Assembly: GCF_021869535.1 (NCBI RefSeq)
Contig: NW_026262690.1
Span: forward strand, 103,602,001 to 103,666,000
Length of the DNA stretch: 64,000 bases
Reading direction: 5' to 3'
Source of the DNA: Mytilus californianus
Lineage: Eukaryota
In this document: one piece after another, positions 1 through 22,156 of the stretch
Numbering within the stretch: the first letter of the stretch is position 1
How the letters are laid out: every line of letters begins with the position of its first letter
The notes under the pieces: model-generated
Databases searched by the model: none
The model's input: the letters and a program-made list of their open reading frames with translations, nothing else
Told to the model about the DNA's origin: nothing
Made by a program: the position numbers and the translations under genes

Positions 1-289
1 TACGTGTCTAAGACACTTATTTTTATGAGAGGTCAAATTCCTGGAAATGACGTATTTTCACTTATTTTCTCTTTTAACCTACTTTTTACATAACAAGTTA
101 TCTAAACGAAACCTATTTGCAAAAACCCGAATACCAAGCTTTTTCGTATTGACGTTTTTTTTAAATAGTTTATGCTTTCTCATCTGTATTAAGTGGTTCC
201 GTAAAGCCTGATTATCTATTCATTCTTTCAATGAAAAAATTACACACTAAACATACGTACATTGTCGATAAATATATAATTTAGTAAGT

Positions 290-625
290 TTTACGAACGA
301 CAACATGATTTGGTTGACCGTTATTGGATTTTAATTATGTGTGTCACAGATGACCATGGATATGTTCCAATTGTCCCAAACATCACCGAATGAGATTTAT
401 CATAGGATTGTACATTTCACGAACAACACGACGGGTGCCACATGTAGAACACAACTGCTTAACCTTACAGAGCGCCTGATATCACCTCCGTTTTTTTTAT
501 CGGGTTCGAGTTGCTCAGATTGTTGTTGGTCTTTTCGTCGTTTTTCGTTTTTTGCCATGGTATTGTCGTTTTCTCTTTGACTTACGAATTGTGTTTGACC
601 CTTTGGTGTTTGCTCCCCCTTTTTA
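290..625 (+). mobile_element. 3' end fragment of the same Penelope-like family
   Basis: ttggttgaccgttat...aacacgacgggtgccacatgt...ctcccccttttt matches 39780-40150. Confidence 0.75.
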
Positions 626-1622
626 TTTGATTGAACTTTTCATCTGTTTCATCGTAGTGAGTACACATTCATTTCATTTTTTTTACCTTGGAACTTAAGT
701 CTTTTATTTTTATCCTGCAATTTAACATTAAAGCATTAACATAACTAATTGTTGTCTTTAATTTTTTCATGAACAGGTTATTGCTTGAATGCAGACCTTA
801 ATGACCACTGGCCTGTGACGTTTACAGTAATTCTAATATGACCGCCCTAACTAAAGCAGGATATTAGGAAATGAAATTTGTGTTCACTGTAAAAATAAAG
901 CAATAATTTTGTGTAGGTCTAAATTATTTGGCTAATTGCAGGATAAAATGGTTTACAACAACATATCAACCACATGCACAAACGAAAAAACAATGAAGTC
1001 CTCTTTAAAAACCATAAAAAATAATGAAAGTTACTACATTTTCATAACAGAGCGTTCAGATAGCCTGAATTTAAGTACCCTTTGCATGATTTTGTATTTT
1101 CTTTGAATTTACAAAATGGTATGCAATACATAATTTTTAAAGTTTAATGCAAATCCAGTTGTTATTTTAAAAGGATAGAAGTCCATTACTAGGAAAGTAC
1201 TGAGCCTTTTATAAAGTGACGGGGATCATAGTATATTCATAGTTGCAACTGTGTTGAGTAAAGTTTCTCCGGAAACATTATTTTTCTTTTGCACATTTCT
1301 CTAGGTAATTGACTTCTAGAAATATGAAAATATAGAGATATTAAGTGTACATAAACTAAATATAAAAATCAATTTCATGTGCATTTGGTAATTATCTTGT
1401 CATTATGAATGAAATGAGAAGCGGACAAGGCATGCACAATGTTTAAATTCAAATGTTTTACGAAGGATTATAGTTTTGAATTCTGATCATGTATAAAATA
1501 TATTTGAGTAAAATTGGTTTGAAGAAATGTCAGCTTATCTTTTCGAAAAGCTTTATCATGAAACTGTAGATTAAATATAAATCAAAAGGAAATGAAAACA
1601 TCATGCCATAATTTGATTCTAC

Positions 1623-1787
1623 CTCCTAAGCCGTGACCAGCTAGAAAGACTTTATCGCCTTCAAAGCCAGCATCCAGCAACTGCTTACGAGCACCGTTGA
1701 ATGCAATAGGGAAGAGAAGTGAACTTGGTATGCTCTCTAAAACCACAACCCATAACCTCAAAGTGCTCCTGCTCTGCAATACTTTTG
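1623..1787 (-). CDS. Alpha/beta-hydrolase paralog 1, exon 2b (tandem duplicate of 2a)
   Basis: ctttcag|CA acceptor; AKVLQSRSTLRLWVVVLESIPSSLLFPIAFNGARKQLLDAGFEGDKVFLAGHGLGG; G|GTAGAA donor; 165 nt, phase 1-1. Later exons were not found in 1-1600 and presumably lie outside the window. Confidence 0.85.
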
Positions 1788-1845
1788 CTGAAAGAGAACA
1801 TTATGAGAAATATTAAAAGTGAAAGGGCATAAAAATGTGTTCTAC

Positions 1846-2010
1846 CTCCATCACCATGGCCTGCTAGAAATACTTTATCTCCGTGGAAACCTTTATCCAG
1901 TAACTCGTTACATGCATAGTTGAATTCGAAAGGGAATGCTAATGTACCTGGAATCGTCTCTAAAATTGCAACCCATAATCTCAGAGCGCTTCGGTTCTGT
2001 ATTGCGTTAG
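1846..2010 (-). CDS. Alpha/beta-hydrolase paralog 1, exon 2a
   Basis: tttcag|CT acceptor; ANAIQNRSALRLWVAILETIPGTLAFPFEFNYACNELLDKGFHGDKVFLAGHGDGG; G|GTAGAA donor; 165 nt, phase 1-1; homologous to paralog 2 exon 2. Confidence 0.85.
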
Positions 2011-2599
2011 CTGAAACATCATTCATATGAATTGTATTGTAAGTTAAGTTAAATTACCAAGACCCAATAAATGGAAGAATGCACCAATAACAAGTCTTGT
2101 CAACGTCACATTCTAATTCTTACTTAACATTTTTTTTTCAATAACGAAGTTTCAGATAATATAGAGGTGGAAGATAAATTCCATTTTGTAATAATGTGTC
2201 CATAACCAAATAACTCTTAAATCAAAATGTTTAATGAAAATTCTGATATTGTTCCTTGATTTAATTCAATGCGTAATGAAAATTAATTAATTTTCTGTTT
2301 CTTTTGATAAATATGACATTTTTATGATTATTGTTAATGGCATAAGTCAGATATATATAGTGATAAAAGCAACATTAACAATTCATGAACTGTGTGTTTT
2401 ACATGTGTGTTTTTTTATGTTTATCAATAATGGGACTCTTTTTTCTCTTTCGAATAACCTATAGTTATAGCAATAGTATAAACAACAAGTGACTATTCTA
2501 CCCTTTACACAAGTTTATCCTTTTCCAAACTTAAAGACAAATTAAAAGAATTGTTCTTACTTTTGTTTCATTAAAAAAATGGTCAACATATATACAGAT

Positions 2600-3620
2600 A
2601 TCTTGTTTTAGGGATGGACAAATCATACTGTGTAAACAAAACACTCTGATTCAAAGAAAAAATAGACATTATCAAGATGCTTGGTGTATTAATGACAACG
2701 TATTTATAACGTGTTGAGGACGTGTTTTTCAACAAACAATCGGCATTCCCATCGGAACCAACTGTGTTCATCTTCTAACTGACTTGTTCCTTTACTAATA
2801 TAAGGCATACTTAATACATGCAATTTTCAGGAAGAATGACAAGAAGCTATTTCCTTCTCCCTTAACTTCACATTCCGCTAAAAAGATGATGTTCCATCAC
2901 TAAACAATTCAAAATTTGTTGACTATGTTGAACGCATCTATCCCATCGAACTTGAAATAAAGGATACAACAGATACAGTTAAGACTGCCTCATATCTTGA
3001 CTTCCATCTAGAAATTAACAATGAGGATCGGTCGAGAACAAACTATTACGACAACAGGGATGATATCCGCTTCCCAATTGTGAACTTTCCATTTCTATGT
3101 AATAACATTCAAGCAGTGCCTGCATATGAAGAACTGTACATATCTCCCAGCTGCTACGATATTACAGAGCTTGCATTTCCTATTATGATTTTCTTGATGA
3201 ACTGCTTTTAATGAAGTTATTAAACAAAGGTTTCCATGTGGTGAAGTTGAAGTCGTGCCATCGAAAATTTTACGTGCGCCATAACAAGTTGGTTGACTGT
3301 TATGGAATGTCTGTTTTACAAATGACAACGAATCCCGCCCTCTTTTCCTCGAATGTGACATCACAGAATTAGACTTATCGCCGAGTTTGTACTTATATAA
3401 ACAACACGACGACTGCCACATGTGAAACAGGATTTCCTTATCCTTCCGGAGCACCTGTGATCACACCAGATTTTTTTGTGGGGTTCTTGTTGCTCAGTCT
3501 TAAATTTCCTATGTAATGTTTTTATATGTTTTTTTTTTGCCTTTTGGTCGTTTTTCGTTTTTTGCCATGGCGTTGTCAGTTTGTAATCGACTTTGGTATC
3601 TTCCGCCTCCCTTTTTTAGT
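2600..3620 (+). mobile_element. Decayed Penelope-like RT fragment plus 3' UTR in intron 1 of hydrolase paralog 1
   Basis: Nucleotide similarity to 39110-40150 (caaacaatcggcattcc, catctatcccatcgaact, cacgacgactgccacatgtg). Confidence 0.85.
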
Positions 3621-5157
3621 ATATAGATAAATATATTATATAAGTAGGCAGTATTTCCTTTTTGTCACTGTTCTTAATATAATAATTTAAATGCAAATAT
3701 GAGGAGAGGCATGTGTCACGCATTTAAAAAAAAATGGATGTTTTATCCATGTTACAGGTTTATATTGTTCATTGTTTATTTGTGATATTTAGTATCAATC
3801 ATAGCAATTGTTTTGATTACATAGTAATAAGATATCATATCTTATCTTTTAAAAAGATAACAAGTATCCCATTAACTATAATATGTTCCAATAACTATGC
3901 TTGTATATATTCAAGCAAACTTAGCTTGTATTCTCTTCTATGCTATACAAAACATTGAATTAGATCACAACATTGAATCACATAATATATATATTATAAT
4001 TCAATCAGACATGCATAATTTATTATCTTTATTGATTTGTATAAATTTTGTTGGAACTTACAGTTTAAACAGTGACATACTTTGATAATGACTATAACTT
4101 CATCTGATTTCATATTCAATACACCGGTAGGGCAAATTTCCGCTACAAAAATTCACACCCGGGTCATTTTCATATTTTTAATCATTACGAAAAATTCAGA
4201 GTACTTTGAAGTTCTGACAATATTCTGACTTATTAAGAATCATTCGACAAAATTATAAATGTATAAAGATATCTCAAACCTGTATTTTTTTTACTAAAAC
4301 CAAATGGTTCACAAAAAGGATAACAGGAATCATAAATATTTTGTACCAAATTGAAGAGTACATTAGACCACACAAACCACCGTAAACGATAACGATCAAC
4401 ACGTGTTCTAGATAGCATGACTTGTACAGGTAGGATATAAGGTGGGGTAAAACCGGATTTTCGTGCACACGCTCCTCCCCTTTTGCCAATGTCCTCTTTG
4501 GAATGAAGAAATACGGGTTGTCAGATACAAGTTAGTTCATTTTGTTTAGATGAACTTCGATGTAAAATTTTACAAAAAAACATGTGAAAATTATAATTTT
4601 GTATAAAAATCCATTCGAAGTTAACGTGGTAAAATTTTTGAAAAATATTTAAGTATATTATGTAGGTCTTAATATTAACATTCAAGTAGGTTTTGATAAT
4701 TCTTTTATGTTTACCCTGTAAGTGAAACAGAAACAGAAGCAACTGACCATAACTGTTAAGTCCATGGTTTTACTTCATCAGTTATTATATGTGCACAATG
4801 TGTTTACGAATTCATTGTTTATTAAAATTTATTCCTTTCACTAGGGTCATTTATTTTCTTTGCTTCGGTCAAACGTATTCACGAGATTCGCGTTTCAAAT
4901 GTGATTGGTTCGTTCGATAAAGTTCATTTCAATTTGTCAATTGCCTAGGAAATATTTTTGAAATAAGTGATTTTTATCGAATATTAGTAAGCAAAGGCAT
5001 TGACTCAATACGTACAATAATGCAGTTTTTGGTAAATCTCACTTATAGTACACAATGTTTTATTCAAAATTCTGTTGATTAGTATATAATCATATTGTCA
5101 TAAACTGGTTTTAAATGTTAATGAGCTTTATCTTTTTAAATAGTGAAGTCCTCTTAC

Positions 5158-5314
5158 CTAGAGGCTTGTACGCCGCTCCCGGTATAGACGTATCAGGGAC
5201 GATCACTATTGCAGCTTCCGATCCAGTTTTGTTTGGAGCCATAATTGTCACTTTTATACTCAAACATGATTGAATGCACAGAGAAAACAAAGCTATTTTG
5301 TATATTGTATCCAT
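5158..5314 (-). CDS. Secreted alpha/beta-hydrolase paralog 1, coding exon 1 (signal peptide plus first strand)
   Basis: MDTIYKIALFSLCIQSCLSIKVTIMAPNKTGSEAAIVIVPDTSIPGAAYKPL then G|GTAAGA donor (phase 1). Same length (157 nt) as, and clearly homologous to, exon 1 of the paralog at 22157-22313. Confidence 0.88.
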
Positions 5315-5751
5315 TTTGTTCAAAGAAGTAAATACAAATACGTGTATCTTTGTTTATCAGGTGTTTATCTTTATAAAATGATATATCACATCATATCTAT
5401 GTATATGATATCATATCGTCCTCATGTGATGACTTGTCCACTATACCGGGGAGCGACATTGATATTATCAGCAGATTGGACTATAGACTTGGCCTTGGAA
5501 TTTCTATCTTAAACCGTTTTCATCTGTTTGGATTAGAAACAGTATCTGGAAAAAAAACCAGAACGACCTAAGATATTTTTATTCGAGCGTCAATAGCGAG
5601 TCAAACGCGCGTCTTGCGTACTAAATTATATAAGACTGGTATATTTCATTAATTTTTAGTGATTTTCTAATGTTTGTGATTCGTATGTGTACATATCGAT
5701 ATATGTATGCGATGTCTGACAATTTAAAGTCTAATATAATACCAATGTACA

Positions 5752-6470: not shown

Positions 6471-8885
6471 ACATCAACATCAGCTCCTATTGTATCATAC
6501 AGTTACGCCAAAACCATTGCACCTAAAGTATTTAACTATAAGCAAGCATTGCAAGACCTTGATTTAGAAGAATACCTAAAAAAAACCTTATGAACTGTGA
6601 CTGTTCCCACTCGCCCTACATTTACAGCCCCTCTGGAAATGTTATTATTGGGGATCTAAACATAATTCAACATGAATATCTCCGAAAAGTGATATCTCAT
6701 GGTCCTAAGTTCAGAGAAGCCCAACACATCAATTGGAACCATAAATTCAAAATAATTATGGATTCAATTTAGGACTACGCCAGAACATGGGCTAAACGAG
6801 AAGAATTGAACTGGACACTTTGTCAGAATGGGTCAAAACAATCAGGCCTTGCGGCCTACTCCGAGTACTGAGTAAAGTTTTATGACCGAGGGCCCAGGTC
6901 TCTCATAAAACGTCGAATTCATAAGTTGTAGTGTGAATGATCGACCAAAGTCCGTTTTCAGAGACAAAGAAGCTGTGAAATGTCTATCATCTCTTCACGA
7001 TAAATATGTTGTTGTTACTGCGGACAAAGCTTTAAATAATATTGTCTTTGTATGTAAATCGTACTATTACGAGTGTCTTGAAAAAGAATTAGGAATAAAT
7101 GAGCACTCAGATAATCCTACAATCAAAAACATATCTGACAAGGATGAAATTTTGACAAATCATAAGTCCTTCATGGCTTCAATGAACATTACTTTGAACA
7201 GCAAATCTGAGGACTTACCTTATTTGTATTGGATACCTAAGCTTCACAAAATTCCGTACAAACAACGGTACACTGCCGGCTCATCTGCATGTTCTACAAA
7301 AGAATTGTCCATTAGATTGACAAAAATTCTGTCCACAGTGAAAGAGTGTCTTCAGAAATAATGTGAAATTTTTACTCGCGTAGTGGTATTAACCATATGT
7401 GGATTCTAAAAATTTCTAAAGAACTTCTGGATAATTTTAAATCACGATCTTTCTCTGAAATCAATTCTATTAAAACTTTTGATTTTTCAACCCTGTATAC
7501 CACCATTCCCCATGTTAAATTTAAAAATCGTCTAAAAGAAATAATCCACAATGCTTTTCAATATAAAAATGGTAGCATACGTTATAAATTTATTACTTTG
7601 GGATACCATACGGCATATTTTGTAAATAGTGAACAAAAAGGTAAAACATGCTATACAGAGGAACAACTGATCAGTATGCTGGAGTTTCTTATTGACAACA
7701 TATTTGTTGAATTTGGAGGTAGAGTTTTGTAACAAATTGTTGGCACTCCTATGGGAACGAGCTGTGCGCCTCTCCTTGTCGACCTCTTCTTATTTTCACA
7801 CGAGTCGGAGTTCCTTCAGACACTTTTCAAAAACAAAAAGATAAAAAAAGCCAGGTCATTTATAAATTTCACATTCAGATATATTGATAATGTTCTTTCC
7901 ATTAACAATCCAAACTTTTCTGATTGGGTTCCATTAATATATCCTCAAGAACAAAAAATAAAGAAACATCAGACACGGCTTCCTCTGCCTCATTTTTAGA
8001 CTTATAACTCGAATTTGACATAAGCGGTCATCCAGTACCAGAATCTATGATATATGAGACGATTTTAATTTTGAAATTATCAATCCCCCCTTATTAGCAA
8101 TATACCAACTTCACCTGCATATGGGTATTCGGTATTCAAGAGCTTGCAGCTGCTACTCAGACTTTGTAAACGTCACCTGTGTCTGAGCAGAAAGTTGAAC
8201 CAGGGTTATGTCAAAGAACGTCTCGTCCGTTTTCTGTATAAGTTCATCGGAAGATACCAAGACCTTGTTGATAGATATTCTGTATCAGTTTCACAAATAA
8301 TACATGATGGTCTTGAAGTATAGATTCTACGTTTTTTATCATCTTAATTACGTGTTATTATGTTCTTTGTAAATTATTAACCTTTTTTTAGTCCATTTTT
8401 GGTTATATCCTTTTGGCGTGGCTTGGTACTTATACACCCCACCATTGTATTATTGTGATATGGTCATTTTTTGTATTCTTGTCGTTCATTTTTGCTTATG
8501 TGCTTTGTCTGTATGCCATATTGTTTTTTTTTTGGGGTTTTTTTTTGACATATTTGTTTGTTTTTATAGTGATCAAGATTATAACACAATGCTGACTGTT
8601 GTACCACTATTTTTGACATTTTTTCGTATTATGTCTGTTTGTTTTGTTCACACATTGTTGTCAGTATAATGGAATTATAAGCGACTGTCATACAAGTGGG
8701 AAGTTTAGCTAGCATAAAACCAGGTTTAATCCACCATTTTCTAAATAAATGCCTGTACCAAGTCAAGAATATGACAGTTGTTTTCCATTCGTTTGATGTG
8801 TTTGAGCTATTGATTTTGCCATTTGATAAGGGACTTTCCGTTTTGAATTTTCCTTGGAGTTCGGTATTTTTGTATTTTACTTTTT
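6471..8885 (+). mobile_element. 5'-truncated, decayed Naiad-type Penelope-like retroelement (family 1): linker, RT and 3' UTR
   Basis: CDC motif 6596-6604 followed by GNVIIGDL; LYWIPKLHK, KTFDFSTLY, PMGTSCAP, FRYIDN; stops and frameshifts; no GIY-YIG after the RT; ends in a T-run at 8885. Confidence 0.85.
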
Positions 8886-9744: not shown

Positions 9745-10065
9745 TTATGTAGAATTAGATTTTATTTGTGACGTTGTATATTTTAGAGAGTCGATATAAA
9801 TCCATTCCATTGCCCTGAACGGCGATATCAAAGTACAATCATTTTGTCCAGAATAGCTTTTCGTTGGCTCACTCATACCAGTCTGGAATCTGGCAGCTGT
9901 TACATAGAGACCTGTTTGATTATAGTTGAGGTCTAATTGCGACCTGACCCATTGAAATTCTGATGAAACACTGACGTCATCATTGAATATAATTCGTCTT
10001 CCTCTTGATGTGTACCTTTCCTTTGCCATTGGTGATGATTTCGCAAAGGCTAGTTCATAAGCATT
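9745..10065 (-). CDS. Alpha/beta-hydrolase paralog 2, exon 7 (last)
   Basis: tttcag|AAT acceptor; NAYELAFAK...RYTSRGRRIIFNDD...CTLISPFRAMEWIYIDSL...NST*; AATAAA at 9677-9682 (-). The seven exons total 1467 nt = 488 aa plus stop with no frame break. Confidence 0.88.
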   Translation of the reverse strand, partial: NAYELAFAKSSPMAKERYTSRGRRIIFNDDVSVSSEFQWVRSQLDLNYNQTGLYVTAARFQTGMSEPTKSYSGQNDCTLISPFRAMEWIYIDSLKYTTSQIKSNST

Positions 10066-10787
10066 CTGAAAAACATGATTTATAATAAAGTTTACGTCCA
10101 AATCTTTTCAATATTCTAGTATGTCCTAGTAATCCACTATTTGATATTCTTAAAGCTACGGTTTTTTACGAATGAACAATCGGAAATGAACAACCTCCTA
10201 GTATTTTTGTGTGCAAAACACTCACAGCTAAAATCTGAATTTAAACAATGGTGAACTCTTACCTAAAGATGAAAAATTTCCTGTTATCATACATGTTACT
10301 GAATTTGAATAAGGGACAATACAAATGGTGACTAAAGAGAGAAAGAATACTCTGTCAACTCCATGATACCTTTTTTATGGGTTTGGTATTACAGATGCTT
10401 TAGTTTTCAATCATGTATGATCTTTATTTTGAGTTTTTTCTCATTTATTTTCGTTGCATGAACTTGGTGTTCAGTTGTAGTTTAATCATACATGCAGTTT
10501 TCAAACATTTATTTCACCAAATTCATTGGTTGCAGTTTGTCCATTCATTTCCATTATCAAACATTGTTTTAGAAAACTAATTTGGAGATAAACCAATTTA
10601 GAATTCTGTAACAGATATATTCTCTGATTTTTTTTAATTCAATCTATATCATAAAATATGCATATTTTATGAAACAAAAATGATTTGCATCGTTAATAAA
10701 CATATCACACTTTTTTGTTATGTTCATATTTGATGATCAAATGTTTACTTTGAGAACAAAATAGATCTGACAATAAATACTTAGTAC

Positions 10788-11033
10788 CTGATTGACTTCT
10801 TTACAGGATGCCGGTATACCAAATTGACTGGAGGGTAAAATCTTTTTGACAGCCTCTTGACTTTTCATCGTTGCTTTTAGTTGTAAAGGACTCAGAGGTG
10901 ATGTAGTTGAATCTAGAGGGTTTGGTTGCATCCATAAAGTTGTCAGACTTTCAATTTTTATATTATCTGACGGAATTAAGACACGTGATTGTTTTGGTAA
11001 AATATCCAGTGATTCGTCTTCGTAATTGATAAA
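10788..11033 (-). CDS. Alpha/beta-hydrolase paralog 2, exon 6
   Basis: ttattag|TTT acceptor; FINYEDESLDILPKQSRVLIPSDNIKIESLTTLWMQPNPLDSTTSPLSPLQLKATMKSQEAVKKILPSSQFGIPASCKEVNQ; CAG|GTACTA donor; 246 nt. Confidence 0.8.
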
Positions 11034-11229
11034 CTAATAAAAGATAAATTCAATTTGAACGAAAATGCTTTTCATGTTTGCAGGTCTTTAGATAAAATCT
11101 TATTGTTATATAAAATATAAATAATTGTAAAAAATAGCATCTTTTAAAGTTTTCTGCTTTATAAGCATATTAAGAAATCCAAGGTTGTTCTGTTCATAAT
11201 TTCATTATCAAAAACTACTCATTTAATAA

Positions 11230-12125
11230 CTCATTTATTCACATGATGGTCTTGATTTACAGATTCTATGTGCTGACGTTATTAACTTTACAGTGTTCAC
11301 TTTATTTGTCTTTATACTATTATGTTCCTTCTGGTCGTATGACTTTTGAAGTGACATGGAATTTGTTCATTCAGTTATCGGGTTTTTGGCTTTGGGCGTT
11401 CTTGAAGCGGGTGGGTCCAGAGGTATGATTCGGACGCACGAGGTTTTTATAGTGTTGTTTTAATTTTATATCCCTTGGTTACATATTTTACTTAATTTGT
11501 ACTTTATCGAAAAAGTGTATATGAAATTATGTTTTACTATACTGTGTTAACCGCAGAAACGTTTTTGTTGGCGTCTTTGTCAGATTTATTTGCATGTTTG
11601 TTTGATTTTGTATGTCATTTATGTTTGTATGTTTGTGATGTTTATTTTCACAGTTTTGGCTGCTGAATCCTAATTATCAGAGAGGTGTGTATACGAAATT
11701 ATGTTTTACAATACTGTGTGTATTATCAACTACAAAAATCCTTTTTTTATTGGCGTCTATGTCAGATTTATTTGTATGTTTTAATTTTTAAATCAGTTTT
11801 GGTTTCTATGATTGTGATATGTTTACACAGGTTTGGCTGCTGGGTCCCAATTATTGTCACGTTTACCAATAATGTCTGTTTGGGTTGCTCACCCAACTTT
11901 GTCAATATAACTTAACTATAAACAATTGTCATACAAGTGAGATATAAAACCAGGTTAATCCCCCATTTTCTATCGAAAATGCATGTACCAAGTCAGGAAT
12001 ATGACAGTTGATTTCCATTCATTACGTTGGTTGATATAATCGAGCGTTTGGTTTTGTCAGGTTTTATCGACTTCCCCCATTGTTGAATTACATTGGAGTT
12101 CGGTATTTTTGTCAATACTTGTTCA
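11230..12125 (+). mobile_element. 3' UTR fragment of Penelope-like family 1 with internal tandem duplication
   Basis: Begins atgatggtcttga (end of RT, compare about 8300), similar to 45013-45215 (-), ends with the about 250-bp terminal module. Confidence 0.7.
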
Positions 12126-12258
12126 CGTAGACATCAAATACTTTTGAGAGAGATAATCTAGCTAGATCATACAAATGGCTCATCTACAGTTAATGATGAT
12201 ATTATTAATTTTTACTTTAACAGTTGTACTGAAAAACATTCAGAGAGAATAATATTAC

Positions 12259-12366
12259 CTCAACACCTGTTATATTTTTCAGACTGACAACGAGTTCTTG
12301 AGCAGTGTTAGTCCAGTGTGAGGTAAATTCTGGGTTTTGATCAAGAGCTTTCACTTTCGAGAGAGG
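12259..12366 (-). CDS. Alpha/beta-hydrolase paralog 2, exon 5
   Basis: ttttag|CCT acceptor; PLSKVKALDQNPEFTSHWTNTAQELVVSLKNITGVE; GAG|GTAATA donor; 108 nt, phase 0-0. Confidence 0.8.
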
Positions 12367-12497
12367 CTAAAATGGTATAAAACATAATTCATTTGCGCTT
12401 ATGTTCAAAATACAATTATAAACAAATGCACTTGATTTTAATTTTTACAGAATTATATGATTGGTGTTAACCATTTCATTTTATTATTGTTGTGATT

Positions 12498-14040
12498 AAT
12501 AAAATTGAGAATGGAAATGGAGAATATTTCAAAGAGACAATAACCCGACCAAAGAGCAGACAACAGCCGAAGGCCACCAATGGGTCTTCAACGCAGCGAG
12601 AAAATCCCGCACCCGGTGGATGTCCTCAGCTGGCCCCTAAATAAAATTTGTACTAGTTCAGTGAAAATGGACGTCACACTAAACTCCAAAACATATAAAT
12701 GAACTAAAATTAAAAAACATACAAGACTAACAAAGGCCAGAGGCTCCTGACTTTGGACAGGCGCAAAAATGCGGCGGGGTTAAACGTATTTGTGAGATCT
12801 CAACCCTCCCCCTATACCTCTAGCCAATGTAGAATAAAGAAACACATAGCAATACGCACAGTAAAACTCAGTTTAAAAGAAGTCCGAGTCTGGTGTCAGA
12901 ATAGGTAACAAAAGAAACTTAGCAAAATGACAATGATACATAAATGAACAAAGGACTACTAGCAGTTAATGACATGCCAGCTCAAGACCTCAATTAAACT
13001 GATTGAAAGATTATGTCTTCATCATATAAAATCAAGTACAATCCCTCCCGTTAGGATTTTAGTATCATACCATCATAAAATATATGAGAAGAACATAACC
13101 CGTATCATGCCAACAACTGGTTTTAGAATAAATGTGTTTATTTCCGATGCAAAGACCCTATGAGTGAATCAATATTAATACCAAAATATGCAATCCTTAA
13201 TGACTTGACAACAGTATCGTAAGTATATCCTTTCCGAATAAGTCCGATTAAAGGTTTGGTTAGCTTTTGAGGTGAATGCCGACATTTTTGTGCTTTGTAA
13301 ACAATATTACCATAAAATATTGGATGTGAAATACCTGAACGTATATGATGTCTGCATGTTGATTTATATTTACGAATGATGTCCTTGTACCGATGATAAA
13401 ATTTAGTAAATGTTTTGAATAGTTTGTGATATCGAAAACCCTAGTGTAATAATTTTTCAATAATACAGAGATTTCTTTCGTTGAAATCAAATACGTTGTT
13501 ACATACACAAGCGAATCGAACAAGCTGAGATATATAAACACCATAAGATGGCGACAAGGGAACGTCACCATCTAAAAATGGATAATTAACAATAGGAAAT
13601 GAGAAATCATCTCTTTTATCATAAAGTTTGGTATTAAGCTTCCCGTTAAGGATAAAGATATCAAGATCCAGGAAAGGGCAGTGTTCATTGTTAGTATTAG
13701 CTTTATTTAAAGTCAGTTCGGCAGGATAAATCTCTTTAGTGTACATACTGAAGTCGTCATTTTTGAAAGCCAATATATCATCTAAATATCTAAAAGTGTT
13801 ATTAAATTTTTGAATCAGATGTTGTTTCGATGGGATTTTGCTGATTTTAGTCATAAATTGTAACTCATAACAATACAGAAACCGGTCCGCAATAAGTGGT
13901 CCACAGTTAGTCCCCTTGGGAAATCCGATAACCTGACGATATACGGAATCTCCATAGTGAACAAAAATGAACCTTTTTGTAAGACGTTTCGGTCACTTTC
14001 CAATTTCTTTCTTATCCCTCTTAACCACATAGTAGACATT
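12498..14040 (-). mobile_element. Penelope-like RT C-terminus plus about 700-nt 3' UTR (family 2)
   Basis: FRYLDDIL, LYDKRDDFSFPIVNYPFL, SYGVYISQLVRF. 3' UTR nearly identical to 41898-42551. Confidence 0.85.
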
Positions 14041-15256
14041 TCACTTGGGAAATATACTGTCTATAAAAATCTAAGTCAAAAAAGAGCATAAAAACACCAT
14101 TCCCTTAGTAAAAAGATAACAAGATCAACAACAGTTCAGATAAATACCACACAGAAAAAGATTGAACAAAGGAACACACAAATAAATCGAAGATGAACTA
14201 AGACCTCCAAAAAGGTAACAGTTTCTGCTGAACTTGTTATACCCTCCTTGTTCCTGATGACATATACACCCAATGATAAGTCGCATTGGTTAATAGTCAT
14301 TCGCCCAAACACCCTTCCCCAAATCCTGCTTAACCCCTCATTACAATTTGTTGTTTTCAGAATCTTTACAATAAAACGTCATTGTGCATCTATTTTGTTT
14401 TTATCCTAATTATTTTGGGTGTTCTATAAGCTAAATTATAAACTTGCACATTGCTTTATGTAAGACCGGTTGGTATCTTTTTGTGAGTACCTCTAGTAGT
14501 AAACTAGGTCAGGAGATATAAGGATTGAGTCAGAGGGTTTATTCCTTGAATGCCTACACCTTTTGATCTGCTGACAAAATACAGGTAAAAAAATGTAGGC
14601 ATTCAAGGAATAGTGTCTTATCAAAATTAAGTGTAATCAAAATAAACAGTAATCATAATCTGTGCAGGCAAGATGAGTTTCCTAATTAAAATTTCAGGCA
14701 ATATTTTTATTTTCCTGTTTGTTTGCAATAAATTAATATTTTGTATTTTTTTCTGTATGTTTGAAATGATTTTTTTTAAAGGAATGATAAAAACACTCTT
14801 CTTTGACAGCTCAGTAAATGTTAACGAAAGATAACTAGAATAAGGAATATATATTTATTCGTGTTCAATTGATAAAGAATATAGGTAATGTGGTATGGGT
14901 TTTATTCATTGTTGAAGGCCGTACGGTGACCTATAGTTGTTAATTTCTGTGTCATTTGGTCTCTTGTGGAGAGTTGTCTCATTCGCAATCATACCACATT
15001 TTCTTATTTTTATATTTAAACAGTCGTTCTTTCATTTATTTGTTTCAATTTTAATTTCTTACTTTGAATTTTAATGCTATTTTTCTTATTATTAATTTTT
15101 AACTTAAAAATTAAATATTATTATTGCATTTCATTTAAATTAAATGTTTATATAAAAAAAAAGATATTTTTATGGTGAAAAATAATTTTTACCTTTAAAC
15201 TACTTTTTTCCTAACTATTAAATTTTGTTCTAAAACAACACCAATTCATTAAAACA

Positions 15257-15518
15257 TTGATTGATTGATTGTTGGTGTTTTAACGCCATTTTTAAGCGCC
15301 ACATTTGGGCTATTTCGTGGCGGCCAGTTTTTATTGGTGGAGGAAGCCGGAGTGCCCAGAGAAAACCACCGACCTTCGATAGGAAAACTGACAATCCTAG
15401 TCAATTAAGATTGGAGTCGAGTGCACCGGCACCAGCGGGGTTCGAACTCGCAACCTCAGTGTTGACTGTCTAGTGATTACAGTAGTAACTACTTAGACCA
15501 CTCGGCCACCGAGGCCCC
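15257..15518 (-). mobile_element. Full-length tRNA-derived SINE with V-domain-like core
   Basis: A box GTGGCCGAGTGG, B box GTTCGAACC, central GGTTTTCTCTGGGCACTCCGGCTTCCTCC, (CAAT)n tail, 12-bp TSD TTCATTAAAACA (15245-15256, 15519-15530). Partial copy at about 19560-19690. Confidence 0.9.
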
Positions 15519-15996
15519 TTCATTAAAACAACATCTATTCTTTTTTTTTTGGTAGGCATTCGAGGAATAGATTTTCTATAAAATGTAGGCATTCCAGGAA
15601 GAGTCCAGGAAGACACCAGTCAGAGAACAGAAGAAAATTTAATGTGAGTAGTTGTCATTCTGACAATACGGTTTTAAATGTTTTAACGCTACTACAATTT
15701 TGACTTTCATGGACACTGTTGATTGTTAACTCTAGATTTCTAAAAATGAAACTTGCTAATTAGTAGATCGAGTATAAATTTAGTGGAAACGTAGATCCCA
15801 CATTGCAGTGTTTGATATTCCAATGATCAGAATAAAAAAACTTTACTACGTAAGTTTGTTGCTGAGTTTTCCTATATTTGATATATAAATACTAGATAAC
15901 TTTACTTAAAGACTACTAAGATCAAACAAAAACTCTATCATTGTATTGACAGTTTCACCATATTTATTACTTTATCAATAGCCTTATTATATTCAC

Positions 15997-16279
15997 CTGC
16001 ATCATTGTAGTGGTTTTAGTATAACCGTCTTCCAAGATATTTTCGGCTTGCGTTACATTGGTATCTGTATCATTTCTGACAACTACCATGAATGCGTTCG
16101 AGTAATTAGCTATGGTATTATATGCTACAGATTGAGATACTTCTGGATTTAGATCATGATCAGTTACAGTTTTTGGTAATTGACCCGACGCGAACTGTCC
16201 GTGATTTATGCTCTCCATTACTATTACAGGTGTCCTGTATATTTGCTCTGGATCGCTTTTCACGTCTTCTTGGAGTTCC
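15997..16279 (-). CDS. Alpha/beta-hydrolase paralog 2, exon 4 (catalytic His, NHGQF)
   Basis: tttcag|G acceptor; ELQEDVKSDPEQIYRTPVIVMESINHGQFASG...TKTTTMMQ; CAG|GTGAAT donor; 283 nt. Confidence 0.9.
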
Positions 16280-16359
16280 CTGAAATAAAAACCAATATTG
16301 TCATTTTTTAAACCTTGCTGTATTGGAAAAAATAGTAAAACGGACATGACAAATACGAT

Positions 16360-16620
16360 AAATGGAAGATCTCAATTCTTTTTTTTTGTACGGCAATGTT
16401 CCATATGGCGCATTTTATGCCGTGTTTATTTCACAACTGGTACGGTTTGCTAGAACGTGTTCTAATGTAGCTTACTATAATCGTAACATTGCATTAACAC
16501 AGAAATGACTTTTACTGAAACCACAGACTCCTGAAGACTTTCTACAAATCTAACAGTCGGTATCAGCATCTTATTACATGTATTAAACATAATGTTTCTC
16601 GTAAAAATGAATACTATTAG
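16360..16620 (+). mobile_element. Decayed Penelope-like RT thumb fragment
   Basis: GNVPYGAFYAVFISQLVRFARTCSN readable across frameshifts. Confidence 0.65.
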
Positions 16621-17833
16621 ACGGCGTTTCTCGTCGTACCTTAAGGATGTACTTAGGTCAGGTTTATGAATTTTTGTCAGATATTCGGACTACTTGGGTT
16701 TTTTCCTACGATACAGGGTAAAATATTTTGCCCCATATCACCCACTTGTCTTTTCATAGAAGACTTCAATGGCTCATAAAAAATATTAAAATTTAAGCAG
16801 ATTTTAGATTTTTGTCTTGCGATTTGAGACCAATGCCAATGCTATACATAAGGTGAAAGTCCAAGTCAGCCTTTTTCCGCCATTTTTTAAAACTCAAATA
16901 TCGCATAAGTTCCATAACCTATCAATATTTTTAGCTTATTTTGTTCCTTTACTAATGCTCTTCTGAATTATAGTATCAATTTTAAATTCTAGATTTTTTT
17001 AAATTTCACCTAAATATATCCTTAAATAAAGTCGTTCATAGAACTAATACACTGCAAATGATATAAACTCGCGAAATTTCTTAAAAAAATAAAACATCAA
17101 AGGTTACATGCGTCATAGACTCCCTTATTCAGTACAAAAAAAACTTTCTTCCGATGGTATGACCTTCCTCATTTTTGAACTGTTTTCAAAATAATGTGCC
17201 GTTTTAAATTTCATTTGTTTAAACTTCAAATTAGTGGTCGTCCTGTAAGCTGCTCTGTGCGTTTTAGTTTTACGACAAATGTATGGTCTAGATATAAGCA
17301 AAGGTGCAGGTTTGTTTGCACGTTAAACTGATTAAAATCACCACATGTTGTGCATGTGCAAAGTCTTTCTGATCCATGTGTTGTTCATAGTTTTCTGAGC
17401 TTGTTTGTATGTTTGGGGTTTTTTTTCGGAGTAGTCTGGTGGTTGATGGTCTTCTGTTTTTGGCGAATTTTTTTTATCCTTTTTATGTTTCATTCTTATA
17501 TTATAGTTATGAAAGTGTAATTTTGTCTGTATTTTCCCCGATTAGAAAACTGAACAATTACCAATTTATGTCTTGTTAACGTTATACATGCTTCCATACA
17601 GGATTCTTATCAAGTCCTTTTACATAAAATGTAGCAAGCTTTTCAAATGTATTAAACGATTTGATCTTTATTTAGTTTTTAAATGTTTAACTTCTTATCC
17701 TTTATATGGTTGCTACTGTTTCATGGCTAATATTTGCTGTTACCTTTAACTTACACATTAATTGTCGCCAAGGCAACAGTTACTAGTATATGAAAATAAA
17801 AACAAACAAATAGTGTTTAAAAATTAATCTCAC

Positions 17834-18008
17834 TCGAACGTATCTACGATTCTGGTTATTCTAGTTAATCCATCTAGGTCACCGCTAATGGTCAGAACCG
17901 GAAATGGATACTCTTTAAGTTTGTTGTTCTTTGTAATGTATGATGCAAACAACAACACTCCATCTAAAATATGGTTCGCTTTTTGTCCATAAAGGGCTGC
18001 AACTTCAC
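17834..18008 (-). CDS. Alpha/beta-hydrolase paralog 2, exon 3 (catalytic Asp, GDLDG)
   Basis: ttctag|GT acceptor; EVAALYGQKANHILDGVLLFASYITKNNKLKEYPFPVLTISGDLDGLTRITRIVDTF; GA|GTGAGA donor; phases match both neighbours. Confidence 0.9.
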
Positions 18009-18489
18009 CTAGAATTAAACTTAGCATATAGTTGGTGTTACTGCAAATTAAAATAGAGGATATAGCTATTTTTAGTCGGGTTTGCTAAATTTTTATGACA
18101 AAGAATTGGCTAAAACTTACTTACGAACATTTTCAGCTACTGTTAATTGTCATTGAGCAAATTAAGCTTGAGTTAATTCCCGCTCTTGAGCTATGTACTA
18201 CGATGCTGCTTTCGTTGCTAGTCAGTTAATGTCCTACAAATATCCCTTATATTCCTTATAATTACTACTATATTAAAATCTTTCATCAGATTTTCATACA
18301 AAACATCGTTCAACCTTATTTCTTTTCAAATTATATGCACACCTTTTCCTCACGCGCGTGAATTGTTTCGGTGCGGAAAATTGGGAGGTAGTTATGGAAC
18401 GAAAAATGTCATGGAAAAAGACCGTATGAATTGGAAGTAGACTTTATAAGTTTGCTTAATTTGTGTAGCTTGACTACACAAATAAAAAA

Positions 18490-19388
18490 TAACTGGAAAT
18501 TTATATACGATCCGGGTAAACTTATCAATCCTTTGAATAAACTTATTCTAAAAGGTTACCAATTCAACACTGTAATTAGAACTTTGAATATTGTTTTCAT
18601 TGGTAAAATATTGATTTTGTTATCAGTAAATCAAAATCATACTAAATAGTTTTGTTATACACATATGCACTTTAACGGTACTACAATCTGTCGATACCTT
18701 TATTTTAGTTTTGCACAAGGTCATGTTTTTCTCTGACTGTTAATGACGTCTTTACACTAAATTCATTGGATGTTGGATGTGTACTGATTGATATTTTAGT
18801 CTTAGATACATGATTTTTCTATTAGTTGTTATTGGCTTTGAACTAGCTGTCATTAACTGCGTGTACTCTCAGATCTGTACTTAGTGTCCTTTTGTGTTGT
18901 TCGGGTAGAGGGATGGATAAATACCCTGCCACGTCCGGTCTGTGTTTATGTTGATGTGTTTCTGCTTTGTATCGATCTGATGAGTTAAGCCTTTTTCAAC
19001 TGGTTTTTATAGTTTGTTCTTATGTTGTGCTGTTACACCACTGCAGTCGTTTAAGGGGAGGATTGACCGCTAAAATACATGTCTAACCCCGCCACATTCT
19101 TTATGTGCCTATCCCAAGTCAAGAGCCTGTAGTTCAGTGGTTGTCGTTGGTTCATGTCTGTCATATTTGTTTTTCGTTAATTATTTTGTTATAAATTAGG
19201 CCTTTAGTTTTCTTAATTGAATTGTTTCATATTTTTCATATCGGGGCCTTTTATAGCCGACTATACAGTATGGATTTTTCTCAATGTTGAATGCCGTACG
19301 GTTGTCTAAATTGCATACATCCACTTTATTTGAACTTTGGTGGATATTTGTCTCATTGGCAATCATACCTCATCTCCTTATTTTTATA
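18490..19388 (+). mobile_element. Penelope-like C-terminus plus 3' UTR (family 3)
   Basis: KLINPLNKLILKGYQFNTVIRTLNIVFIG resembles the family-2 C-terminus. Its terminal segment recurs at 14890-15013, 23210-23462, 29455-29620 (-) and about 44300-44360. Confidence 0.7.
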
Positions 19389-19782
19389 TAGGAGGATTTT
19401 TCTTGGGTGTTTTCTTTTTCATAACATATGGTCATTACAGGCAAAGGAGTAGGTTTGTACGCACGTAAAATTGATTTATCCCAAACACCGCGGTTTCTTG
19501 CCTTCCAAGTAAGGATATCTGGACCATAATTATGTTGTTTGTTGTTATTAATCTTTTTAGGCCAGTTTTAATTGATGGAGGAAGCCGGTGTGCCCGGAGA
19601 GAACCACCACCTTTCGGCAGAAAAACTGACAATCCTAGACAATAAAGATTGGAGTCGAAGGCACCTGCTTCGTGCCTGGTTCGAAATGATCTTAAATTAA
19701 CATTGCATAAAAAGTATATCAATAATTAAATATCTATAACATGGCGTGGTTATATTTACAGTGTAATAATATCAGATTATTA

Positions 19783-19904
19783 CATGGCATTTTTCATATC
19801 AGATGTATTATCAGCCCAAGGTTTAATATCAGCCCAAGAGCCGAAGGCTCGAGGGCTGATATTGACCGAAGGCTGATAATACATCTGATATGAAAAATGA
19901 CATG
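19783..19904. repeat. Inverted repeat (about 34-bp arms) inside a larger repeat in hydrolase intron 2
   Basis: CATGGCATTTTTCATATCAGATGTATTATCAGCC / GGCTGATAATACATCTGATATGAAAAATGACATG with an inner GAGCC-GAA-GGCTC hairpin. Confidence 0.75.
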
Positions 19905-20396
19905 TTATGATCTTTTTATCATATGCTTCAACAATGGAGAAAAATAACAATTTTATTTTTATTGACGATAAAAAAAAATCAACAAAACATGATGAACATT
20001 GTTTCGAAAGGTCAACATTTGTAAAGTAACTTTTTAAATTATGCTGGAAACTTTGAAAAACGCATTTATTGTATCATTTGGTTTTTTTTTTGCATTTTAC
20101 ATTATATATTTTCCTGTTCCATAATAATTGTTTTGTACCCTACTTTGTTATGTTTTTCACTGAAAACATACCATTGAGGTGTATTTTCCGGAATTTACCG
20201 AGTAACGCCGGAATGCCATGCGATAACGTTACGGAGAGGTATGTGATAATAGACGGAAGCATGTGATAAATTTTTCATATCAGCCCGCTAAACACCATTT
20301 CGGAAAATATGGAATTTACGTACATTTCATGCTATTATCATACAGTAAAAAATATAAGTTATTTACTCTAAGTATATGATAATATAATATGCATAC

Positions 20397-20573
20397 CTCC
20401 AAGACTATGTCCAGCCAAGAACACTTTCTTCCCTTTATAACCTGCCTTTAGTAACTCATTAACAGCTTTTTTAAATACTATAGGAAGCTGGAGTGGGTTA
20501 GGAAGTTTATTAAAAAATCCGTCTAGCAAGGCAACCCATAACTTCAGATTACTATTCTTCTGAATAACTTGAG
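20397..20573 (-). CDS. Alpha/beta-hydrolase paralog 2, exon 2 (nucleophile elbow GHSLGG)
   Basis: ccacag|CT acceptor; AQVIQKNSNLKLWVALLDGFFNKLPNPLQLPIVFKKAVNELLKAGYKGKKVFLAGHSLGG; G|GTATGC donor; 177 nt; missed by the ORF track. Confidence 0.9.
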
Positions 20574-22156
20574 CTGTGGAAAAATAATGTTAGTTACAGC
20601 TTAGCAGTAAGTAATAATTTAAACATATATCATACGCAAACGGGAAAGTAAAATGTAAGGACTTAAGAGTTATTAAAAGAATTAGTAGTTTGTTCCAGTT
20701 TTTATCTGTAGCCTTTTTGCACTTCAAAATTGAAAATTAGAATTGTGGGAAAAATCAATTTTATGCGAAAATCTGCATGATTTTGCTGTAGAAACAGAAA
20801 AATATGCAATTATAGAATCGTTGTTTTTTTATAAGAATTTGACAACGTACTTATAATAACAGATGTACATTAATGAGAAAAACGTTTTATGTAACAACAG
20901 TGAATCAAGTTATAACATTTGATTTGGTAAACCCGCGTTTTTTAATGTATCGAAAACGGCATACGGCATCATTCAGGGCATCATCAATGATTCTTCCGCC
21001 TTAAAAAATCATAGCAATTCTTACTCACATAAATATATTAAGGCATCACTTTATCAGAACAACAATTTGACGTGATCCGAAAAGTAGTTCTGAAAAAGTA
21101 TTCTCCCACTCTCACCAGAAATATACTACACAAGTTAGGGGTTGTTAAGCGCCCGCCATCCGGCTAACATGTTTAACCCCGTCACTTTCTGGATGTGTCT
21201 GTTACAAATCAGGAGCAGGTTATTCAGTAATGTATATCATATTTGTTTTTCTTTTGCCGCTATGATCCATGAACAAACAAGTTTAAAGAAGATATCTAAG
21301 CAAAGACAGAATAATTGTTATGTTAAGTCTTCAGTGTCAGTCACCAAATTTATGTGCAGATCTCTGTGAGCCGCTGATTTTCATGTGTTCATAGGTGCGC
21401 TTAAAGCTATCATCAATAATACAAAAAAGTTGTCATCGTAATATTAAAACAAAAACGTTTTCCTCGTTATTTAGATTAAAGAAATGTGTAAACCTTTTTC
21501 CACATAATACTGACATAAAGCAATTTTGAGCGCATGGAAGTTAAAAAATTGAGCTCTAGAATCATGCAAAATCAGTCGTGCCGAGATGAATATCACCTGT
21601 TATCTACAAAAGCATTATTTTAACAAGATTGTAACACATTGTAACTCAAGAAATTAAGCTCATAGATTTTGGAAAATTCTTTAGAATGCACAGTTTCTTT
21701 TTTCCGCTAGTCTAGCAGTGTCCTTTAAATAATTTTCATTGTAATTGAAGAACTTATTGTCAAAGGATCCCGATGGCTTCATTGTTTGGTTTCTTTACCT
21801 TTTAGCATTTTCCAAATTTACATTGATAAAAGACTTATTTCACTTACATTTTAAATAAAAAGAGTTTTCTGTTGTGATAATAATAATTAAGTTCTCAAAG
21901 ATTTTAAATCAATAAGTTACTGTTATGTGTTACCTAGTCTGAAAGAATTCTGTAGTACCGTTTCCTTGATCAAGTCACATGACCTTAATCTAGTTCAATG
22001 TCAGAAATACATTTCCAAGATCAAAACTGTTTTTGTGGATTTAAAATCTATTTGTTTGTTCTATGACAACTCGTTGCAGTCTAAAATGCAGGGTTTTTTT
22101 TCTTTCTTTCAAATACAATGTAATGGCCCCTAAATTTTACTTATCAGTAGCCTTAC

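What the first reader, a model, noticed from the sequence alone, without database searches (positions are those of the whole stretch)
1623..2010. Candidate mutually exclusive exon pair covering the nucleophile-elbow segment of a hydrolase
Two homologous exons, each exactly 165 nt and phase 1-1, each with an AG acceptor and the same weak G|GTAGAA donor, lie only 58 nt apart. They are about 64% identical in protein (36/56 by hand) and both remain open, which suggests long-term selection on each. The neighbouring paralog has a single copy of this exon. Including both would duplicate a beta-alpha-beta piece of the fold. Candidate branch points (TTTAAT, CTCAT) sit only about 33-42 nt from the upstream donor, the classic steric-hindrance arrangement for mutual exclusion. 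The variable residues lie in the loop/helix between the oxyanion strand and the elbow, so the isoforms could differ in ligand specificity.
Basis: partly seen in the sequence, partly recalled or inferred. Interest (0 to 1): 0.8.

Follow-up and report, generated by a model that had tools for sequence, protein, structure and literature searches.

The report
Either-or exon pair in mussel pseudo-hydrolase
A California mussel gene for a secreted, catalytically dead hydrolase-like protein carries two old tandem copies of one 165-base exon, and mussel RNA uses one copy or the other; it is an ordinary case of mutually exclusive splicing that databases already list for sister species.

Summary
On the minus strand, exons 2010-1846 (2a) and 1787-1623 (2b) are each 165 nt and phase 1-1. 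Each has an AG acceptor and a G|GTAGAA donor, and they lie 58 nt apart. They share 35/55 residues and 115/165 bases.

The window is Mytilus californianus, gene LOC127738940. RefSeq lists only the 2b form for this species.

Mutually exclusive use is supported:
- RNA contigs of M. coruscus join exon 1 to 2a and exon 1 to 2b.
- Both exons run on into the exact start of exon 3.
- No listed contig joins 2a to 2b.
- M. trossulus, M. galloprovincialis and M. edulis each have annotated pairs of 477-aa isoforms that differ only in this segment.

All five Mytilus genomes keep both exons open. Their splice sites are identical and the intervening intron is 55-58 nt and highly conserved. Steric hindrance is the likely enforcer, but this is inferred.

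Both copies read GHG(D/L)GG where the family has GHSLGG, and the catalytic His is Tyr, so the protein is a pseudo-enzyme.

The two paralogs checked (one in this window, one in M. trossulus) each have a single copy of the exon. I found no paper on this gene. The scan has already noted other such exon pairs in this genome (OSBP, VCP, beta-galactosidase), but not this one.

The parts
5158..5314 (-). Exon 1 of gene A (M. californianus LOC127738940). It runs from the ATG through the signal-peptide-like helix and the first core strand, and ends in phase 1 before GTAAG.
   Evidence: It is identical to residues 1-52 of XP_052106401.1 (P0046). It is the donor of both joints seen in RNA contigs.
2011..5157 (-). 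Intron 1 (3147 nt to exon 2a). It contains very high-copy repeats at about 2880-3600.
   Evidence: Joint 2010>5158 with CT..AC ends on the + strand; repeat depth up to 1e6 in DNA contigs.
1846..2010 (-). Exon 2a, 165 nt, phase 1-1. It encodes the end of helix A, strand 4, a loop, helix B, strand 5 and the elbow GHGDG. Net charge is -2.
   Evidence: It is spliced to exon 1 and to exon 3 in M. coruscus RNA contigs. It is used in isoform X2 of M. trossulus and of M. galloprovincialis, and in the corresponding M. edulis model.
1788..1845 (-). 58-nt intron between the twin exons. It is probably too short to be spliced out.
   Evidence: It is 55-58 nt in five species and 83% invariant, against 9-59% for flanking intron stretches beyond the ~40 nt at the splice sites. 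The other introns of the gene are 0.7-3.1 kb.
1812..1818 (-). TTTTAAT, a candidate branch site for the exon 2b acceptor. The branch A at 1813 is 33 nt into the intron.
   Evidence: It is invariant in five species, whereas CTCAT varies and is partly deleted in M. edulis. Its function is inferred, not shown.
1623..1787 (-). Exon 2b, 165 nt, phase 1-1. It encodes the same structural elements as 2a, with the elbow GHGLG. Net charge is +2.
   Evidence: It is spliced to exon 1, skipping 2a, and to exon 3 in M. coruscus RNA contigs. It is the form in the M. californianus RefSeq model.
1..1622 (-). Start of the intron between exon 2b and exon 3. Exon 3 lies about 137 nt beyond the window edge.
   Evidence: No exon-3 homology within 1-1622. 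Exon 3 is at L005 8452-8633, where window coordinate = 8315 minus L005 coordinate.
20398..20574 (-). Comparator: the single exon 2 of the neighbouring, catalytically intact paralog B (LOC127738939). It carries GHSLG.

Best explanation
The two exons are a mutually exclusive pair made by an old 223-nt tandem duplication (exon plus about 58 nt of intron) inside one Mytilus gene. The gene encodes a 477-aa, probably secreted protein with an alpha/beta-hydrolase fold. It has lost its catalytic Ser (now Gly) and His (now Tyr). Each mRNA takes exon 2a or exon 2b. The two isoforms have the same length. They differ at 20 of 55 residues in M. californianus, 17 of them fixed between the 2a and 2b classes in five species. 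Half of the differences lie in helix B and the loop before it, and one is Leu versus Asp right after the lost nucleophile. Net charge shifts by 4. Shown here: both exons are intact and conserved, both splice paths exist in RNA, and isoform pairs are annotated. Inferred: inclusion of both exons is blocked because the 58-nt intron places any branch point at most about 45 nt from the upstream donor (steric hindrance). Neither double inclusion nor double skipping would break the frame, so mRNA surveillance cannot be the enforcer. Also inferred: the switch changes a binding surface rather than a catalytic activity.
For: Geometry and homology. RNA contigs of X4 show joints 5158>2010 (depth 111) and 5158>1787 (depth 294), both with GT..AG ends. 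Both donors run into the same 24 letters, which equal the start of M. coruscus exon 3 after an AG acceptor. Depths of 2a plus 2b roughly equal the depth of exon 1. Isoform pairs of 477 aa that differ only in residues 53-107 exist in M. trossulus, M. galloprovincialis (two annotations) and M. edulis (two annotations). Five genomes keep both exons open with the same splice sites and a 55-58 nt intron. Comparing 2a with 2b gives dN 0.26 and dS 1.08. Each exon has pN/pS mostly 0.2-0.5 between the two species groups. There are 17 fixed class differences. The intron is 83% invariant and free of the large indels seen in the flanks. The other introns are 0.7 kb or longer. Published criteria for steric interference are a donor-to-branch distance under 50 bp in human (PMC5740500) and too-short introns between 3n-length exons in C. 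elegans (PMC4165533). Dead triad. Fold.
Against: Direct splice evidence comes from one run of contigs in a sister species. Contigs drop rare forms, so low-level 2a+2b or exon1>exon3 transcripts cannot be excluded, and only 15 of 300 joints were listed. Two raw RNA runs (X21, X34) gave no reads on either exon in the roughly 6% of each run that was read. The smallest intron that Mytilus can splice is not known to me, and 58 nt is spliceable in some animals. For M. californianus itself, use of 2a rests only on word shares of run X20. Nothing here shows what chooses between the exons, or that the isoforms differ in function.
Confidence: 0.8

Rival explanations
1. The exons are mutually exclusive, but exclusion is enforced by something other than intron shortness, such as competing RNA structures (docking and selector sites) or exon-specific repressors.
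For: The 58-nt intron and the 40 nt before exon 2a are far more conserved than neighbouring intron sequence, which could reflect regulatory elements. The minimal intron size in Mytilus is unknown.
Against: RNAduplex between the upstream intron, the 58-nt intron and the downstream intron gives energies no better than dinucleotide shuffles (z -0.9, +0.3, +0.6). Both donors are the same GT-AG type, so U2/U12 incompatibility does not apply. Exon length is 3n, so mRNA surveillance cannot enforce exclusion.
Confidence: 0.12
2. One exon (2b) is effectively constitutive and 2a is a leaky, functionally irrelevant duplicate that is included now and then.
For: RefSeq lists only 2b for M. californianus. 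2b is about three times as deep as 2a in X4.
Against: 2a makes up about a quarter of transcripts in X4, and its words are held by 19 runs from 9 studies, most of them only guessed to be RNA. It is open, with intact splice sites, in five species. Its protein sequence is identical between M. californianus and M. coruscus. Its pN/pS is below 1 in most comparisons.
Confidence: 0.05
3. The two mRNA forms come from two gene copies or haplotypes that each carry one exon (presence/absence variation), not from splicing of one gene.
For: Mussel genomes are rich in presence/absence variation (general knowledge). X4 shows two allelic contigs within 2b.
Against: All five assemblies and a DNA run (X17, contig spanning 548-2186) carry both exons in tandem on one molecule. 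Both RNA branches share the same exon 1 and exon 3 flanks.
Confidence: 0.03

Closest known systems
Steric-hindrance mutually exclusive exons: alpha-tropomyosin exons 2/3 (Smith and Nadal-Ginard 1989, as cited in PMC4165533), and the C. elegans clusters with too-short introns (egl-15 5A/5B, let-2 9/10; PMC4165533)
   Same: They are adjacent alternative exons separated by a very short intron or a branch point close to the donor (most such pairs are homologous duplicates). As in the C. elegans set, the exon lengths are multiples of three, so only the splicing geometry can prevent double inclusion.
   Different: The mechanism is not tested here. 58 nt is longer than the C. elegans cases (14-30 nt). 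The minimal spliceable intron in mussels is not known to me.
RefSeq/ENA isoform pairs of the orthologous gene: M. trossulus LOC134710278 X1/X2, M. galloprovincialis LOC143069371 X1/X2 and VDI66352/VDI66353, M. edulis XP_071161906/XP_071161907 and CAG2243468/CAG2243469
   Same: It is the same gene and the same two cassettes, with equal-length 477-aa products that differ only in residues 53-107.
   Different: These are automatic annotations without a description. M. californianus LOC127738940 lists only the 2b form. I found no paper naming these genes.
Non-catalytic alpha/beta-hydrolase-fold proteins, such as neuroligins and other esterase-like binding proteins (from general knowledge)
   Same: The alpha/beta-hydrolase fold is kept under selection after loss of the nucleophile, and a binding role is presumed.
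   Different: They belong to a different subfamily. Here it is an Abhydrolase_5-type domain plus a roughly 250-aa C-terminal domain, whose nearest solved relative is AroC 9eh6. No ligand or partner is known.
Other tandem mutually exclusive exon pairs noted by this scan in the same genome (OSBP, VCP, beta-galactosidase)
   Same: They too are tandem duplicated exons covering a functional core segment. At least for VCP and beta-galactosidase, the notes say databases list both forms but no paper was found.
   Different: They are different genes, and in those the catalytic or binding residues are intact. I did not test them.

Membership tests
Mutually exclusive exon pair from tandem exon duplication | Adjacent homologous exons of the same length and phase | tested here: met
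   165 nt each, phase 1-1, 64% aa identity, E about 1e-21.
Mutually exclusive exon pair from tandem exon duplication | Each exon is spliced to the common upstream and downstream exons in RNA | tested here: met
   Joints 5158>2010 and 5158>1787. Both donors continue into the start of exon 3. This was seen in M. coruscus RNA contigs, not in M. californianus.
Mutually exclusive exon pair from tandem exon duplication | No, or very few, transcripts contain both exons or neither | tested here: inconclusive
   No 1846>1787 joint among the listed joints, and no 532-aa isoform in the protein cluster. However, contigs drop rare forms, most joints were not listed, and the raw RNA runs had no reads on these exons.
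Mutually exclusive exon pair from tandem exon duplication | Both copies are kept by selection in related species | tested here: met
   Five Mytilus species keep both exons open with the same splice sites. pN/pS is mostly 0.2-0.5, and there are 17 fixed class differences.
Steric-hindrance type of mutual exclusion | The donor-to-branch-point distance in the intervening intron is below the spliceosome's minimum | tested here: inconclusive
   The intron is 58 nt (55 in M. edulis). The conserved TTTTAAT puts the branch A at 33 nt. This is under the 50-bp criterion used for human (PMC5740500), but the branch point is not mapped and the mussel minimum is unknown.
Steric-hindrance type of mutual exclusion | Lengthening the intron allows double inclusion | not testable with these tools
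   This needs a minigene experiment.
Docking/selector (competing RNA structure) type of mutual exclusion | Conserved complementary intronic elements | tested here: not met
   Duplex energies are no better than shuffles. The sequences are too alike for a covariation test.
Alpha/beta-hydrolase fold (Pfam PF12695 Abhydrolase_5) | The fold and a profile match | tested here: met
   Relatives match PF12695 at E 1e-10 to 1e-15, and the M. trossulus ortholog of the gene at 6e-6, just under the cut-off. The AF2 model has pLDDT 89. Foldseek gives 9eh6, cutinases and carboxylesterases at probability 1.0.
Active serine hydrolase | A Ser-Asp-His catalytic triad | tested here: not met
   The family consensus is GHSLGG / GDLDG / NHGQF. 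This gene has GHG(D/L)GG and NYGQF in both isoforms and in all species aligned.

The most novel reading that the evidence does not exclude
The either-or exons act as a splicing-controlled switch of the vestigial active-site pocket of a secreted pseudo-hydrolase. One form places Asp and the other Leu next to the lost nucleophile, and helix B changes from basic to acidic (net charge +2 versus -2). The two forms would then bind different ligands or partners. In the extreme version, the Asp form would regain some chemistry that the Leu form lacks.
Probability: 0.15. Interest if true: 0.5.

Novelty: new member of a known kind. Interest (0 to 1): 0.3.

Why it matters
This is a clean, conserved example of mutually exclusive splicing in a bivalve, with a very short intervening intron and 3n-length exons. 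It would make a convenient natural test of the steric-hindrance rule outside vertebrates, flies and worms. It also shows selection maintaining two alternative versions of the core of an enzyme fold that no longer has a catalytic triad, which argues that this Mytilus-specific pseudo-hydrolase has a real, probably binding, function. In practical terms, the M. californianus annotation lacks the 2a isoform. Beyond that, the finding is ordinary: the phenomenon is well known and sister-species annotations already carry both forms.

Tried and rejected
- Pfam on the single exons gave nothing useful.
- Exon 3 was sought in window 1-1622 and is not there.
- The two raw-read RNA runs X21 and X34 gave no reads on exons 2a or 2b in the roughly 6% of each run that was read.
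- Word shares of runs hint that run X20, of the same organism label as the window, holds 2a without the intron or 2b. SNPs break many words, so I treat this as weak.
- A docking/selector RNA structure was tested by duplex energies against shuffles, with no signal.
- U2/U12 incompatibility and NMD enforcement are rejected from the sequence: both introns are GT-AG and both exon lengths are 3n.
- A 55-aa tree of the exon segment is poorly resolved. It shows only that 2a groups with 2a and 2b with 2b across species, so there has been no recent conversion between them.
- Exact look-ups of isoforms P0160, P0163 and P0167 found no gene on record; the other isoform of each gene did.
- Paper searches by accession numbers, locus names, family name plus Mytilus, and mutually exclusive exons plus Mytilus found nothing on this gene.
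- A search for the minimal intron size in bivalves found nothing usable.

Full report
**What is in the sequence**

The gene lies on the minus strand. Exon 1 runs from the ATG at 5314 to 5158 and ends one base into a codon, before GTAAG.

Two exons follow, at 2010-1846 (2a) and 1787-1623 (2b). Each is exactly 165 nt, is preceded by a pyrimidine tract ending TTTCAG, and is followed by GTAGAA. The intron between them is 58 nt.

In the frame handed on by exon 1 both are open. They share 35 of 55 residues and 115 of 165 bases. A translated search of the window with either exon finds the other at E about 1e-21. Only about 6% of local 165-nt stretches are open in a given frame.

Differences between the two copies are concentrated at third codon positions: 16, 9 and 25 by codon position. 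Nei-Gojobori values are dN 0.26 and dS 1.08. This is an old duplication with purifying selection on both copies. The first 20 nt after each donor are also similar, so the duplicated unit was the exon plus about 58 nt, or 223 nt in all.

**Which gene and which genome**

A profile of the exon segment found a 477-aa protein in the representative library. A word search with that protein, and a look at its cluster, identified the gene.

- Exon 1 and exon 2b of the window are identical to residues 1-107 of XP_052106401.1, Mytilus californianus LOC127738940.
- The locus fetched for that protein (L005, GCA_021869535.1) is 100% identical to the window over the exons tested.
- The window is therefore M. 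californianus.
- Exon 3 lies at L005 8452-8633, about 137 nt beyond the window's first base. This is why it could not be found in the window.
- The other introns of the gene are 0.7 to 3.1 kb.
- The neighbouring paralog in the window (LOC127738939, exons from 22313 down to 9748 on the minus strand) has one copy of this exon, at 20574-20398.
- A third paralog, fetched from M. trossulus, also has one copy.

The duplication is thus specific to this gene.

**Is the pair spliced one-or-the-other?**

Word searches of public runs showed 19 runs from 9 studies, most only guessed to be RNA, holding exon 2a words. No RNA-like run held more than about one exon's worth of the 388-nt stretch.

Four runs were laid on window 1-5400.

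- *Run X17* is DNA. Its depth is even, and one contig spans 548-2186, so both exons sit on one molecule.
- *Run X4* behaves as RNA. Its depth is in the hundreds on the exons and near zero over most of the introns, apart from the high-copy repeats in intron 1.
- In X4, one contig joins 5158 to 2010 (depth 111) and another joins 5158 to 1787, skipping 2a (depth 294). Both skipped stretches have GT..AG ends on the gene's strand.
- In X4, the contigs leaving 2a and leaving 2b continue into the same 24 letters.
- Those 24 letters occur exactly once in the M. coruscus locus L001, right after an AG acceptor, at the start of exon 3. They differ by 2-3 bases in the other four species.
- X4 is therefore M. 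coruscus RNA, and it contains exon1-2a-exon3 and exon1-2b-exon3.
- No joint from 1846 to 1787 is among the listed joints.
- The depths of 2a (about 111) and 2b (about 294) add up to roughly the depth of exon 1 (about 320). This fits transcripts that carry one or the other.

The limits of this evidence are as follows:

- It comes from one run of contigs in a sister species.
- Contigs drop rare forms.
- Only 15 of 300 joints were printed.
- The two raw-read RNA runs had no reads on these exons in the roughly 6% of each run that was read.

**Independent support from annotation**

The 90% identity cluster of the protein holds pairs of 477-aa products:

- M. trossulus: LOC134710278 X1/X2.
- M. galloprovincialis: LOC143069371 X1/X2, and VDI66352/VDI66353.
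- M. edulis: XP_071161906/XP_071161907, and CAG2243468/CAG2243469.

Aligned, the members of each pair differ only in residues 53-107, one carrying the 2a cassette and the other the 2b cassette. No product of the length expected for double inclusion (532 aa) was in the cluster or among the hits. M. californianus RefSeq lists only the 2b form, and the M. coruscus model carries 2a.

**Conservation**

Loci from M. coruscus, M. trossulus, M. galloprovincialis, M. edulis and M. californianus all carry both exons. In every species each exon is 165 nt and open, with the same acceptor and GTAGA donor.

- The intron between the exons is 58 nt in four species and 55 nt in M. edulis.
- Between the californianus/coruscus group and the edulis group, pN/pS is mostly 0.2-0.5 for each exon. 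The counts are small.
- Seventeen of the 55 positions are fixed differences between the 2a class and the 2b class.
- In a tree of the segment, 2b copies from all five species form one group and 2a copies are never mixed with them, though the 2a copies are not resolved as a single clade. I see no recent conversion between the copies.
- The 58-nt intron is 83% invariant over the five species. That is close to the exons (87-91%) and well above the flanking intron stretches beyond the ~40 nt at the splice sites (9-59%). Those flanks also carry large insertions and deletions.
- Within the intron, TTTTAAT (1818-1812) is invariant.

**How exclusion most likely works**

Both exon lengths are multiples of three, so including both or neither keeps the frame, and mRNA surveillance cannot police the choice. 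All the splice sites are of the same GT-AG type, so spliceosome incompatibility does not apply. Duplex energies between the upstream intron, the 58-nt intron and the downstream intron are no better than shuffles, so I see no docking/selector arrangement.

What remains is geometry. Any branch point for the 2b acceptor lies at most about 45 nt from the 2a donor, and the conserved TTTTAAT puts it at 33 nt. Published criteria for steric interference are a distance under 50 bp in human (PMC5740500) and introns too short to excise in C. elegans, where all such clusters also have 3n-length exons (PMC4165533). The absence of any insertion in this intron, while its neighbours gained and lost over 100 nt, fits selection against lengthening.

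This step is inferred. I do not know the minimal spliceable intron in mussels, and the branch point is not mapped. What selects 2a over 2b is unknown.

**What the protein is**

The family averages about 480-540 aa. It has an N-terminal alpha/beta-hydrolase domain (Pfam PF12695) and a conserved C-terminal domain of about 250 aa. It is found in molluscs, echinoderms, brachiopods, hemichordates and many protists.

An AlphaFold2 model of the M. californianus protein is confident (pLDDT 89.4, pTM 0.87). Its N-domain matches AroC (9eh6), cutinases/PETases and carboxylesterases.

In an alignment of 43 members, the catalytic motifs are GHSLGG, GDLDG and NHGQF. This gene, in both isoforms and all species aligned, has GHG(D/L)GG and NYGQF. 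So does the third Mytilus paralog.

In the model, the exon encodes the end of helix A, strand 4, a loop, helix B, strand 5 and the elbow.

- The 20 differences avoid strand 5.
- Ten of them fall in helix B and the loop before it.
- One is Leu versus Asp directly after the lost nucleophile.
- Net charge is -2 for 2a and +2 for 2b.

That the switch changes a binding surface is a reasonable guess, not a result.

**Novelty and verdict**

It is a new, undescribed member of a well-known kind: a tandem-duplicated mutually exclusive exon pair, probably of the steric type. Automatic annotation of three sister species already carries both forms, but the annotation of this species does not. I found no paper on the gene.

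Earlier notes of this scan report other such pairs in the same genome. Another first-reader note on this window calls this gene a dead secreted pseudo-hydrolase, which my alignment confirms. Interest is modest.

Noticed in passing
window 2880-3600 and 340-600: Very high-copy repeat inside intron 1, and again downstream of exon 2b. Summed contig depth reaches 1e6 in a DNA run, and the repeat is also read in both raw RNA runs, with many joints between the two copies.
   Followed up: no
window 1685-2026 (minus strand): A 113-aa ORF reads exon 2a through the 58-nt intron into exon 2b out of frame. A near-identical 106-aa 'protein' (P0001) sits in the public protein library and is a spurious ORF call on unspliced sequence.
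   Followed up: partly
window 9748-22313 (minus strand): Paralog B (M. californianus LOC127738939, 488 aa) has the full GHSLGG / GDLDG / NHGQF motifs and a single exon 2. It is presumably the active enzyme from which the dead copies derive.
   Followed up: partly
L006 (M. trossulus CM071704.1, about 97 kb from the ortholog of this gene): A second dead paralog (LOC134710515: AAHGDGG, NYGQF) shares the 4-residue deletion of this exon with gene A but has only one copy of it.
   Followed up: partly
L001 3001-30981 (M. coruscus): The gene model CAC5381906 (525 aa over 28 kb) lacks the first 24 residues and is about 72 residues too long compared with the 477-aa orthologs. It is probably a mis-joined model.
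   Followed up: no
protein P0076 (chiton Liolophura sinensis): It has GHGHGG at the elbow with His kept, which is a separate loss of the catalytic Ser in the same family.
   Followed up: no
window 6933-7999 (plus strand): A run of ORFs there looks like broken reverse-transcriptase pieces of a retroelement, judged by eye from the translations.
   Followed up: no
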